From positions 321,842,001 to 321,906,000 of the forward strand of contig NC_067401.1 of NCBI RefSeq assembly GCF_016432865.1: a stretch of 64,000 nt of DNA, given 5' to 3'. The position numbers and the translations under genes were made by a program. The notes under the pieces are model-generated. The model saw only the letters and a list, made by a program, of their open reading frames with translations, was not told the origin of the DNA and searched no databases. Shown here piece after piece: positions 2,025 to 16,679 of the stretch (its first letter is position 1; each line of letters opens with the position of its first letter). Origin of the DNA: Antechinus flavipes (lineage: Eukaryota).

Positions 2025-2152
2025 NNNNNNNNNNNNNNNNNNNNNNNNNNNNNNNNNNNNNNNNNNNNNNNNNNNNNNNNNNNNNNNNNNNNNNNNNNNN
2101 NNNNNNNNNNNNNNNNNNNNNNNNNNNNNNNNNNNNNNNNNNNNNNNNNNNN
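2025..2152. other. Assembly gap (N run)
   Basis: 128 consecutive N. Confidence 1.
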
Positions 2153-3428: not shown

Positions 3429-3577
3429 NNNNNNNNNNNNNNNNNNNNNNNNNNNNNNNNNNNNNNNNNNNNNNNNNNNNNNNNNNNNNNNNNNNNNNNN
3501 NNNNNNNNNNNNNNNNNNNNNNNNNNNNNNNNNNNNNNNNNNNNNNNNNNNNNNNNNNNNNNNNNNNNNNNNNNNNN
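3429..3577. other. Assembly gap (N run) next to a TA/TG microsatellite
   Basis: 149 consecutive N followed by (TA)-rich sequence. Confidence 1.
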
Positions 3578-14950: not shown

Positions 14951-15431
14951 CTGCATTGTAGAAACGATCCAAAACCGCGGTTTCCCCGAAGTCCAGTTTG
15001 CCAAAATGTAGGGTCTCCAGCGCAGCGCCCACCGTCTCGCAAGCCTCCCGCAGGCACTGCAGGGCCTCGCTCTCAGCTACCACCAGCTGCCCCTGGCTGG
15101 CTTCGTTAATCACGTATGCCACCGTGGTTCTCCGACTGTCACCGCCAGCGCCAGTCGAGTTGCCCCGACTTCGGGGGGCGCTCGGAGCCCCGCTCGCAAC
15201 AGTAGCGGCCGAGATGCCCCCAGTGCAGGTGACAGAGGCGCCACTGCCTTCTACATTCCAGAAGCTACCGGCGGGTGGAGGCGGTGGTGGGAACTGACTC
15301 CCCTCGCCTGGAGCAGCTGCTGCAGCCGCTCCGCCCCTTCGGCTGCAGCCGCCCTCCGGGAAGGTGCAAAAACCCGGGGGGCTAAACGGGGGAACGGGGA
15401 AAGTGATGCCCTCGCTATCTTCTGCGCTCAT
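14951..15431 (-). CDS. MAP3K5: Mitogen-activated protein kinase kinase kinase 5 (ASK1), coding part of exon 1 (160 codons plus 1 nt, phase 1)
   Basis: Translation MSAEDSEGITFPVPPFSPPGFCTFPEGG...RRTTVAYVINEASQGQLVVAESEALQCLREACETVGAALETLHFGKLDFGETAVLDRFYNA matches the ASK1 N-terminus. ATG at 15431; GCAG|GTAGGC donor at the expected YNA|D position. Confidence 0.97.
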
Positions 15432-15526
15432 CTCTTCCAGGGGCTCTGCGGCGGTCGCGGTGGGGTCCACCGCCCAGCCGCCCCGTCTCGCCAGCCACAG
15501 CTCGGGGCTGCTCCGCGCCCGCCGGG

Positions 15527-15541
15527 CTAGGCAGCTGCCAT
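15527..15541 (-). promoter_or_regulatory. Short uORF ATG GCA GCT GCC TAG (MAAA*) in MAP3K5 5' leader
   Basis: gagATGg context (G at -3 and +4), out of frame with the CDS, stop 95 nt before the main ATG. Assumes the TSS lies upstream of 15541. Confidence 0.7.
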
Positions 15542-16679
15542 CTCGCGCAGCACCCTCAGCGCCGCCACCTCCACCGCGGCGCCGCCTCTTCTCCGGAGCT
15601 CTTTCTCCCGGAGGGACGCCGCTAGCCGGCGGCGCGTCTCCCCTCCTGGGCGCCTCCGTGGTCGTGTTTCTCGCTCGCTGCAAGGCTCGGTGTAGAAGCG
15701 GTGTAGGAACAAGCTGTTAGGCGGCTGGGGGGAAAGCGCTTCCTCCTTGTCTAGGGCTGGCTGGGCTCTTAATAAAACCTGTGCCGCCAGACTGCCAAGC
15801 GGCGCTAAGCTCCGGAGACTCCGTGCGCCACTGACAGCATAACGCAACGCCAGCTGCTCTCGTGGCGTGCGCTCTCCTCTCCGCGGCGCGCTCTCTGGGG
15901 ACCGCGGGGGTTTCCTCAGTCTCAGGGAGAGCCACCTGGCCGATACCTTACCGGTGGGGGATCGCAGAGTGTTGTACACGCACACCAGAAGCCAACAGGA
16001 TACGCCTCCCTAGTCAACTGCAGCTTCCTCCTCCTCCCCTTCCCTCTTTTCTCTTCCGATCGCTGCGGTCGCCTAGTCTAAGCGTCGACCCACAGGGCTG
16101 GAGGCTAGCGATTTCATCCAGCCGCAAGTCCACTCAGCTAACTGCCTTCTTCCCGCCCCTTTGCTGGAGCTGGGAGAGTCTGGGGCCAGCCCCCGGGGGC
16201 GGGCACTGCTGGGAAGCCCTCCAGCGAGGTGAAAGCGACCGTGCTATCTCACTTGCTACCGGTCCTCAGTAGCTCCCCAGGTCCTTCTGCAGGACTGGTG
16301 CTCAGCAAAAGATTGTATGTTCCCTCGGTTTTCACCATACAGCTAGCTACCTATCTCGAAATAGGCTTAATATGCAAGCCCTCACTTACTTCAGAAAGCT
16401 GGGGGCTTGTACAAAGTCTCTTTTGCCATTACGAAAGTCGTTTTTCGCTACGGTTGCTGTAAGTTTGAGACGGTCTCCGCGGCCGTGGCGCCCTCGTCTG
16501 GCTCCTGTTTAGCTGTGCTCAATGGTTTAAGTTGTGACTGCCTGGCCTGAGAACAAGTAGGTTGCGCAAGCATGGACCCTGATTTCAAAGGGAGCTAAGC
16601 TACCAGGCGGCAGAGGGCCTTGGCTGGCTCCGAGGTTTGTAGCGTCTGAAAGAAATCGACCTGGGGATCTTTTCTACTC

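What the first reader, a model, noticed from the sequence alone, without database searches (positions are those of the whole stretch)
15432..15719. Candidate non-AUG N-terminal extension of ASK1 starting at an ACG in optimal Kozak context
Seen: the MAP3K5 frame stays open for 95 codons upstream of the ATG (first in-frame stop TAA at 15719-15717). It contains an in-frame ACG at 15659-15657 in the context gACC ACG G (A at -3, G at +4), which would add 76 aa (TEAPRRGDAPPASGVPPGERAPEKRRRRGGGGGAEGAARDGSCLARRARSSPELWLARRGGWAVDPTATAAEPLEE). In-frame CTGs also occur nearer the ATG. My unverified recollection of the human MAP3K5 leader is an in-frame GCC ACG GAG GCG CCG AGG AGG...GAT GGC AGC TGC TTA GCC CGG CGG GCG CGG AGC AGC CCC GAG CTG TGG CTG, i.e. 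a very similar peptide with frame-preserving indels. If correct, that means conservation across therians and a longer ASK1 proteoform. Caveats: long open frames are common in GC-rich DNA (another frame here is also open), the TSS is not known from sequence, and MAP3K5 may already be in non-AUG catalogues.
Basis: partly seen in the sequence, partly recalled or inferred. Interest (0 to 1): 0.72.

Follow-up and report, generated by a model that had tools for sequence, protein, structure and literature searches.

The report
Conserved ACG-started extension of ASK1
The 228 bases before the usual start codon of this marsupial's stress-kinase gene MAP3K5 (ASK1) evolve like protein-coding sequence from an invariant ACG codon onwards, so a longer ASK1 protein very probably exists, but the human gene is already listed in a published catalogue of such extensions.

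Summary
On the minus strand the MAP3K5 frame is open for 95 codons above the ATG (15431), and an ACG at 15659 sits in the context ACC-ACG-G.

Openness alone means little: it has a 6% chance in this GC-rich DNA.

Comparison with ten placental leaders fetched here gives four results:
- The ACG and its context are invariant.
- The ACG-to-ATG distance varies from 207 to 228 nt and is always a multiple of 3.
- pN/pS is 0.31 in the extension frame, against 0.26 for exon 1 itself and 1.4-1.6 in the other two frames.
- The eight codons above the ACG have pN/pS 2.5, and one species has a 4-nt insertion there. The coding signature therefore starts at the ACG, not at the CTG/TTG eight codons further up.

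The finding is not new. Human MAP3K5 is one of the 60 PhyloSET genes of Fedorova et al. 2022 (Supplementary Data 1), listed with a CTG as predicted start and no proteomic support.

What is added here:
- marsupial depth of conservation
- the case for ACG as the start
- a nested 4-codon uORF kept by rare codons

Translation was not shown either.

Earlier notes of this scan report the same kind of extension in other genes of this genome (SRCAP, OAZ3, NFKBID).

The parts
15717..15719 (-). First in-frame stop (TAA) above the ATG. It bounds the possible extension at 95 codons.
15681..15683 (-). In-frame TTG, 8 codons above the ACG, at the position where all 10 placentals have CTG. It is the rival start codon and probably the equivalent of the CTG that Trips-Viz predicts in human.
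   Evidence: for human
15657..15659 (-). ACG, the proposed near-cognate start. The context is ACC-ACG-G here and in L011, and GCC-ACG-G in the other 9 placentals. It is invariant in 11/11 sequences.
15432..15659 (-). The 76-codon N-terminal extension. It is rich in Arg, Ala, Gly and Pro, with pI about 10.4 and about 7.9 kDa.
   Evidence: pN/pS 0.31 (CI 0.22-0.42) in this frame against 1.4-1.6 in the other two. Changes by codon position are 32/24/63.
15564..15575 (-). 12-nt (four-Gly) insertion specific to the window sequence relative to all placentals. It preserves the frame.
15474..15542 (-). Core block, codons 40-62 of the extension. 19 of its 23 residues are identical in all 11 DNA sequences compared. 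pN/pS is 0.14 and synonymous change is also reduced (pS 0.19).
15527..15541 (-). Nested out-of-frame uORF (ATG + 3 codons + TAG; peptide MAAA). It holds the only ATG between the ACG and the main ATG, with G at -3 and G at +4, and ends 95 nt before the main ATG.
   Evidence: It is present in 10/11 sequences and is kept by rare codons of the extension frame.
15429..15431 (-). Annotated (canonical) ATG of ASK1, with G at -3. It is conserved from fish to mammals.
14951..15431 (-). Exon 1 coding part (160 codons + 1 nt), with the GT donor at 14950-14949. Its relatives carry Pfam PF20309 (DRHyd-ASK).
15735..15746 (-). GGAGGAAGCGCT, an ETS-like GGAA core conserved between the window and placentals about 75 nt above the ACG. 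It is the only well-conserved island in an otherwise diverged upstream region and may be a promoter or leader element.
   Evidence: columns 186-200. The ETS assignment is from my own knowledge and was not tested.

Best explanation
The MAP3K5 mRNA leader encodes a conserved N-terminal extension of ASK1 that starts at the ACG at 15659. A minority of scanning 43S complexes would pair Met-tRNAi with this near-cognate codon, helped by the purine at -3, the G at +4 and the GC-rich, structure-prone RNA downstream. They would then make an ASK1 that is 76 residues longer here, and 69-73 residues longer in placentals. The rest scan on and meet a 4-codon out-of-frame uORF in good context. They reach the canonical AUG by leaky scanning or by reinitiation 86-98 nt further on. 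The extension is a basic, probably disordered tail carrying one near-invariant motif of about 20 residues, and that motif is what selection keeps. Shown: the frame-specific purifying selection, the invariance of the ACG, and the start of the coding signature at the ACG. Inferred: that the ACG lies in the mRNA of this species, that ribosomes start there, and what the peptide does.
For: - Seventeen partial proteins from other mammals carry the leader in frame (16, P0031). Residue-level invariance begins exactly at the Thr encoded by the ACG.
- DNA from 10 distinct placental sequences gives ACG-to-ATG lengths of 207, 210, 213 and 219 nt, against 228 nt here. All are 0 mod 3, and the ACG with A/G at -3 and G at +4 is invariant.
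- pN/pS is 0.31 in the extension frame, against 0.26 for exon 1 CDS and 1.37 and 1.55 in the shifted frames. Changes by codon position are 32/24/63 (chi-square p = 2e-5).
- The signal holds outside the ultra-conserved block: codons 1-39 give 0.26 (CI 0.16-0.38).
- The window against each placental shows 23-30 synonymous and 15-25 non-synonymous differences, omega 0.24-0.33, the same as exon 1.
- Distinct gap blocks that are multiples of 3: 5 of 5 in the extension, 2 of 22 just upstream and 12 of 36 in the intron (Fisher p = 2.6e-4 and 8e-3).
- Identity between the window and placentals jumps from about 0.5 to 0.86 at the ACG.
- The eight codons between the CTG/TTG and the ACG have pN/pS 2.5 (5.2 among placentals), and L010 has a 4-nt insertion there.
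- Independent published support for human: PhyloCSF-120 score 305.7 over 87 species. The extension lies inside transcript ENST00000359015.4 (positions 121-361), with Ribo-seq coverage 51%.
- ACG can initiate efficiently in GCC-rich contexts (PMC13754004).
Against: - The RNA-labelled runs hold only 0.39 of the sampled words, from an unknown part of the stretch.
- There is no direct evidence of initiation or of the longer protein. The human catalogue entry has proteomics count 0, Ribo-seq rank only 1113, and names a CTG, not the ACG, as predicted start.
- My placental leaders were found through ORF calls, so they are ascertained for an open frame. This does not bias pN/pS, but it does bias the count of species without stops.
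- Four of the five 3n indels lie in a GCC/Ala tract, where triplet slippage gives 3n lengths in non-coding DNA too.
- The core block also has reduced synonymous change, so some of its conservation is at the nucleotide level.
- The RNA downstream of the ACG folds no better than shuffled sequence (z = -1.1).
- The window's context matches the NAT1 enhancer motif at only 3 of 7 positions.
Confidence: 0.65

Rival explanations
1. The extension is real, but it starts at the near-cognate codon 8 codons further up (TTG 15683 here, CTG in all placentals), as Trips-Viz predicts for human. It may also start at both codons.
For: A near-cognate codon is kept at that position in 11/11 sequences, CTG in placentals and TTG in the window. 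The human Ribo-seq-based prediction is a CTG at transcript position 125, 79 codons above the ATG. That equals 71 + 8 codons if the human spacing is the common placental one, which is an inference because human sequence was not fetched.
Against: The eight codons between it and the ACG evolve with pN/pS 2.5-5.2. One placental (L010) has a 4-nt insertion there that puts its CTG out of frame. Its context is weaker and not conserved: +4 is C or A, and -3 is G, A or C.
Confidence: 0.15
2. The leader is conserved for non-coding reasons: the nested uORF, an RNA element, or transcription-factor sites in the CpG-island promoter. The open frame is then a by-product of high G+C, and no functional longer protein is made.
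For: - Long open frames are common here. The chance figure is 6%, another frame is open for 161 codons, and the frame stays open 35-125 codons above the ACG in placentals even though those parts are frameshifted relative to each other.
- The uORF is kept by rare codons.
- The core block has low synonymous change.
- Proteomics count is 0 in the human catalogue.
Against: A non-coding element does not explain the frame-specific excess of synonymous change. For example, two adjacent Arg positions use 4 different Arg codons each with no amino-acid change. Nor does it explain pN/pS 0.26 in codons 1-39 away from the uORF, or the sharp onset at the ACG. In L012 the uORF ATG is lost by a change that is synonymous in the extension frame.
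Confidence: 0.12
3. In this marsupial the transcription start lies downstream of the ACG. The extension would then be an ancestral feature still visible in the DNA but not expressed here.
For: There is no read-level evidence for the TSS. The upstream region of the window is only about 50% identical to placentals, so promoter architecture may differ.
Against: Omega between the window and placentals in the extension (0.24-0.33) equals that of exon 1, which implies continued selection on the marsupial lineage too. The window's own 12-nt insertion preserves the frame. The human transcript model starts about 120 nt above the extension.
Confidence: 0.06

Closest known systems
Human MAP3K5 entry in PhyloSET (Fedorova et al. 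2022, Nat Commun 13:7910, PMC9789052, Supplementary Data 1)
   Same: It is the same gene and the same leader: an 80-codon stop-to-ATG extension inside the annotated 5' UTR, with positive PhyloCSF (305.7, 87 species) and Ribo-seq coverage 51%. The window holds the marsupial orthologue.
   Different: The catalogue gives only a table row, with no discussion, no experiment and proteomics 0. It names a CTG as predicted start. Here the coding signature is shown to begin at the ACG eight codons downstream of that position. Conservation is shown between a marsupial and placentals by an independent pN/pS and indel analysis, and a nested uORF is described.
Conserved non-AUG N-terminal extensions such as PTEN-L (CUG), FXR2 (GTG), TRPC1 and PELI2 (ACG) (PMC3105428, PMC4892431, PMC9789052)
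   Same: A near-cognate codon in good Kozak context lies upstream and in frame. A coding signature is present in the leader, and the longer proteoform would be made by leaky scanning alongside the AUG form.
   Different: Several of those have Ribo-seq, N-terminomic or functional proof. ASK1 has none. Membership in this class by translation evidence is not established here.
ACG-initiated CLK2 isoform and the NAT1 motif GCCGCC(A/G)NNXXXG (PMC13754004)
   Same: A kinase with an ACG-started extension in a GC-rich mammalian leader. Placental MAP3K5 has GGCGCGGCC before the ACG, with the key C at -7 and G at -6, and A (not G) at +5.
   Different: It matches the motif at only 5 of 7 specified positions in placentals and 3 of 7 in the window, so it is not a NAT1-type site as that paper searched for them (motif or single-base variants). 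That paper's gene list could not be read because its supplement is not held.
Short uORFs that gate the main AUG by reinitiation
   Same: A 4-codon uORF in good context, 86-98 nt before the main AUG, conserved in 10/11 sequences.
   Different: It lies inside, and out of frame with, a selected coding extension, so the same bases are under two constraints. Its effect on ASK1 synthesis is untested, and no paper text linking MAP3K5 to a uORF of this kind was found.

Membership tests
Conserved non-AUG-initiated N-terminal extension (PANT / PhyloSET type) | Stop-free frame from a near-cognate codon to the annotated AUG | tested here: met
   76 codons from ACG to ATG with no stop in the window or in 10 placental sequences. 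The placental set is ascertained through ORF calls.
Conserved non-AUG-initiated N-terminal extension (PANT / PhyloSET type) | Near-cognate codon in a favourable context, conserved between species | tested here: met
   ACG with A/G at -3, CC at -2/-1 and G at +4 in 11/11 sequences.
Conserved non-AUG-initiated N-terminal extension (PANT / PhyloSET type) | Protein-coding evolutionary signature upstream of the AUG | tested here: met
   pN/pS 0.31 against 1.4-1.6 in the other frames. Changes by codon position are 32/24/63. Indels are 5/5 multiples of 3. Human PhyloCSF is 305.7.
Conserved non-AUG-initiated N-terminal extension (PANT / PhyloSET type) | Start codon lies inside the mature mRNA (TSS upstream of it) | not testable with these tools
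In human, the Ensembl transcript starts 121 nt above the extension.
Conserved non-AUG-initiated N-terminal extension (PANT / PhyloSET type) | Ribosome initiation or in-frame footprints at the upstream codon | not testable with these tools
   No Ribo-seq tool is available. The human catalogue gives rank 1113, coverage 51% and a predicted CTG.
Conserved non-AUG-initiated N-terminal extension (PANT / PhyloSET type) | Longer protein detected (N-terminal peptide or size shift) | not testable with these tools
   Proteomics count is 0 in the human catalogue. No paper text on a longer ASK1 was found.
NAT1-motif non-AUG site (GCCGCC(A/G)NNXXXG) | GCCGCC at -9 to -4, a purine at -3 and G at +4 | tested here: not met
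   The window has aacacgacc before the ACG, 3 of 7 upstream positions. Placentals have ggcgcggcc, 5 of 7 including C-7 and G-6 (motif).
Regulatory short uORF | Upstream AUG with an in-frame stop before the main AUG, conserved between species | tested here: met
   ATG 15541 to TAG 15527, present in 10/11 sequences. At these two positions Asp is GAT and Leu is CTA/TTA, against GAC 42: GAT 2 elsewhere and CTG for 98 of 118 Leu codons elsewhere. Function was not tested.

The most novel reading that the evidence does not exclude
The extension and the uORF nested in it form a two-way switch. Ribosomes that start at the ACG read through the uORF and make a long ASK1 carrying a near-invariant, Cys-containing basic motif with its own binding or localisation role. 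The other ribosomes depend on leaky scanning or reinitiation past the uORF. Stress that changes start-codon stringency or reinitiation would then shift the ratio of two functionally different forms of a stress kinase that is a drug target. All structural and pharmacological work so far would have used only the short form.
Probability: 0.25. Interest if true: 0.7.

Novelty: already known. Interest (0 to 1): 0.4.

Why it matters
ASK1 is a central stress and apoptosis kinase and a clinical drug target. As far as I know, its N-terminal region is where thioredoxin and other regulators act.

A conserved extra 70-76 residues with a near-invariant 20-residue motif, kept since before marsupials and placentals split, would be an unstudied regulatory part of the protein. 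It is absent from reference protein models and, as far as I know, from expression constructs.

The existence of the extension is already on record for human as one row of a supplementary table, so the discovery itself is not new.

What this work adds:
- an independent confirmation
- evidence that the start is the ACG and not the CTG predicted for human
- the marsupial depth of conservation
- the nested uORF, which makes specific reporter experiments easy to design

Tried and rejected
One search used 14952-15431 only. Later work on that stretch was local alignment statistics in the sandbox on sequences already held.

2. For the same reason I left out Pfam and PDB motif searches and structure prediction of the conserved block.

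3. A profile search of the extension against 1.84 billion cluster representatives found only the three clusters already known plus one unrelated repeat protein, P0017. The peptide therefore has no detectable relatives outside MAP3K5 leaders.

4. RNA folding downstream of the ACG gave -52 kcal/mol but z = -1.1 against shuffles, so no special hairpin is claimed.

5. The brushtail possum locus could not be fetched because the gene range is too long, so there is no second marsupial.

6. Non-mammals. Fish, amphibian, reptile and bird fragments start at the canonical Met. The few with upstream overhang (P0040, P0046, P0067) show nothing like the extension. One bird leader, L013, has an in-frame stop 53 codons up and no significant similarity. 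The extension therefore looks mammal-specific, on thin sampling and with no monotreme.

7. A conserved 3' splice site near the ACG, which would allow an upstream AUG exon, was considered. The CAG is missing in L006, L008 and L010, so it was rejected.

8. A mitochondrial presequence was considered unlikely. The N-terminal part is rich in Glu and Asp, and the catalogue's TargetP run found none in PhyloSET.

9. Ivanov et al. 2011 could not be checked because its supplements are not held.

No fetched contig was taken for human.

Full report
**What is in the window**

On the minus strand the window holds exon 1 of MAP3K5 (ASK1). The ATG is at 15431-15429, followed by 160 codons plus one base to 14951 and a GT donor.

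Above the ATG the frame is open for 95 codons up to a TAA at 15719-15717.

Other in-frame near-cognate codons are TTG 15683, ACG 15665, CTG 15500, 15494 and 15440, and GTG 15470. The stretch lies in a CpG island of 64-73% G+C.

By itself it is weak:
- Simulated sequences of the same composition keep 95 codons open in 6% of trials.
- Another frame is open for 161 codons.

**Prior knowledge**

No paper text links MAP3K5 or ASK1 with non-AUG initiation or a uORF of this kind.

The supplement of Fedorova et al. 2022 (PMC9789052, Supplementary Data 1, sheet A_PhyloSET) lists human MAP3K5, transcript ENST00000359015.4. The entry gives:
- an 80-codon theoretical extension at transcript positions 121-361
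- a PhyloCSF score of 305.7 on the 120-mammal alignment, with 87 records
- a Trips-Viz Ribo-seq prediction 'CTG; 125-362; rank 1113; coverage 51%'
- a proteomics count of 0

PhyloSET is that paper's set of 60 genes with positive PhyloCSF upstream of the AUG. The extension is known as a prediction, without experiment or discussion.

**Orthologous leaders**

A protein search restricted to the 95 leader residues found 16 partial proteins that carry the leader in frame ahead of exon 1. Nearly all are ORF calls on short genomic contigs of other mammals, and one is a gray whale model.

In their alignment, residue-level invariance starts exactly at the Thr encoded by the ACG. I fetched the DNA of ten distinct sequences (L001-L012). 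None reads like human ASK1 as I remember it. They look like rodents, cetartiodactyls and other placentals.

The window sequence is the outgroup to all of them. Synonymous difference is about 0.5 against 0.13-0.39 among the placentals. This fits earlier scan notes that call this genome a dasyurid marsupial (taken as a lead, only partly tested).

**Coding signature**

- **Start codon.** The ACG and its context (A/G at -3, CC, G at +4) are invariant in 11 of 11 sequences.
- **Spacing.** The ACG-to-ATG distance is 228 nt here and 207, 210, 213 or 219 nt in placentals, always a multiple of 3.
- **Indels.** Distinct gap blocks that are multiples of 3 number 5 of 5 in the extension and 12 of 12 in exon 1. 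Only 2 of 22 are in the 250 columns above the ACG, and 12 of 36 in the intron (Fisher p = 2.6e-4 and 8e-3).
- **Substitutions.** Pooled pN/pS is 0.31 (bootstrap CI 0.22-0.42) in the extension frame and 0.26 in exon 1. It is 1.37 and 1.55 in the two shifted frames of the extension, as in the shifted frames of exon 1 (1.1 and 2.4).
- **Codon positions.** Minimum changes by codon position are 32/24/63 (chi-square p = 2e-5).
- **Sub-regions.** The signal is not confined to one spot. Codons 1-39 give 0.26, the core block 40-62 gives 0.14 and the Ala-rich linker 63-78 gives 0.59. These resemble the variable first 100 alignment columns of ASK1 itself, at 0.36.
- **Example.** Two adjacent Arg positions each use four different Arg codons with no amino-acid change.

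**Where the extension starts**

Identity between the window and placentals rises from about 0.5 to 0.86 at the ACG.

Eight codons above the ACG every placental has an in-frame CTG, and the window has TTG (15683). By codon count this is probably the CTG that Trips-Viz predicts in human: 79 codons above the ATG equals 71 + 8. That is an inference, because I did not fetch human sequence.

The eight codons between that site and the ACG evolve with pN/pS 2.5, and 5.2 among placentals, with changes 6/6/3 by codon position. One placental (L010) has a 4-nt insertion there that puts its CTG out of frame. The 28 codons from the ACG on give 0.28.

Some initiation at the CTG/TTG cannot be excluded.

**A nested uORF**

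The only ATG between the ACG and the main ATG is at 15541. It is out of frame, has G at -3 and G at +4, and opens a 4-codon uORF ending at TAG 15529-15527, 95 nt before the main ATG.

The uORF is present in 10 of 11 sequences with 86-98 nt spacing. It is held in place by codons that are rare in this gene:
- Asp is GAT at that position in 10 of 11 sequences, against GAC 42 : GAT 2 elsewhere.
- Leu is CTA or TTA in 11 of 11 sequences, against CTG for 98 of 118 Leu codons elsewhere.

In L012 the ATG is lost through a change that is synonymous in the extension frame. The same bases therefore seem to serve both the extension and the uORF. This also explains part of the low synonymous rate of the core block.

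**Depth of conservation**

A profile of the extension searched against 1.84 billion cluster representatives found only MAP3K5 leaders and one chance repeat protein.

Fragments from birds, reptiles, amphibians and fish start at the canonical Met, and the few with overhangs show nothing similar. One bird leader has an in-frame stop 53 codons up and no significant similarity.

The extension looks therian or mammalian, on thin sampling. No monotreme and no second marsupial could be obtained.

**Mechanism proposed**

The proposal is leaky scanning. A fraction of 43S complexes initiate at the ACG, which is decoded as Met, and make ASK1 with about 8 kDa extra. The extra piece is a basic (pI 10.4-11.4), Arg/Ala/Gly/Pro-rich and probably disordered tail with an R5 cluster and a near-invariant block of about 20 residues that holds a Cys and a Ser-Ser-Pro.

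The remaining ribosomes meet the uORF and reach the main AUG by leaky scanning or reinitiation.

ACG can be an efficient start in GCC-rich contexts (PMC13754004). Placental MAP3K5 matches that NAT1 motif at 5 of 7 positions, including C-7 and G-6, and the window at 3 of 7, so it is not a strict member.

The downstream RNA is stable (-52 kcal/mol) but no more so than shuffled sequence.

**Limits**

- **TSS.** I left out domain, PDB and structure-prediction steps on the conserved block, and I used only local statistics on sequences already held.
- **RNA runs.** The RNA-labelled runs hold 0.39 of the sampled words from an unknown part of the stretch, which says nothing about the TSS.
- **Ascertainment.** My placental leaders were found through ORF calls, so the count of species without stops is biased. 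The pN/pS result and the published 87-species PhyloCSF score are not.
- **Indels.** Four of the five 3n indels lie in a GCC tract where slippage gives 3n lengths anyway.
- **Translation.** No translation or protein evidence exists for any species.

**Verdict**

The feature is real and is very probably a conserved ACG-initiated N-terminal extension of ASK1.

It is already catalogued for human, so novelty is low. The added value is the marsupial depth of conservation, the argument for ACG over CTG, and the nested uORF.

Noticed in passing
window 15527-15541 (minus strand): A 4-codon out-of-frame uORF (MAAA) lies inside the extension. It holds the only ATG in the leader below the ACG, is in good context, ends 95 nt before the main ATG and is conserved in 10/11 mammals. 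It is maintained by codons that are otherwise rare in this gene: GAT for Asp and CTA/TTA for Leu. One placental (L012) lost it by a change that is synonymous in the extension frame.
   Followed up: partly
window 15681-15683 (minus strand); L001-L012, 24 nt above their ACG: A near-cognate codon, CTG in placentals and TTG here, is kept 8 codons above the ACG although the codons in between evolve without coding constraint (pN/pS 2.5-5.2). It could be a second, minor start or a conserved non-coding base triplet.
   Followed up: partly
window 15735-15746 (minus strand): GGAGGAAGCGCT, with an ETS-like GGAA core, is the only island well conserved between the marsupial and placentals in the otherwise diverged 250 nt above the ACG. 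It may be a core-promoter or leader element of MAP3K5.
   Followed up: no
window 15564-15575 (minus strand): A 12-nt insertion adds four glycines after the Arg cluster. It is seen only in the window sequence and preserves the frame.
   Followed up: no
L003, L006, L007, L008, L009 and L010, upstream of their ACG: In placentals the MAP3K5 frame stays open for 35-125 further codons above the ACG, even though these parts differ by non-3n indels. This shows how little an open frame means in this CpG island.
   Followed up: yes
window 2025-2152 and 3429-3577: Two runs of N (128 and 149 bases) lie in intron 1. They were left as they are.
   Followed up: no
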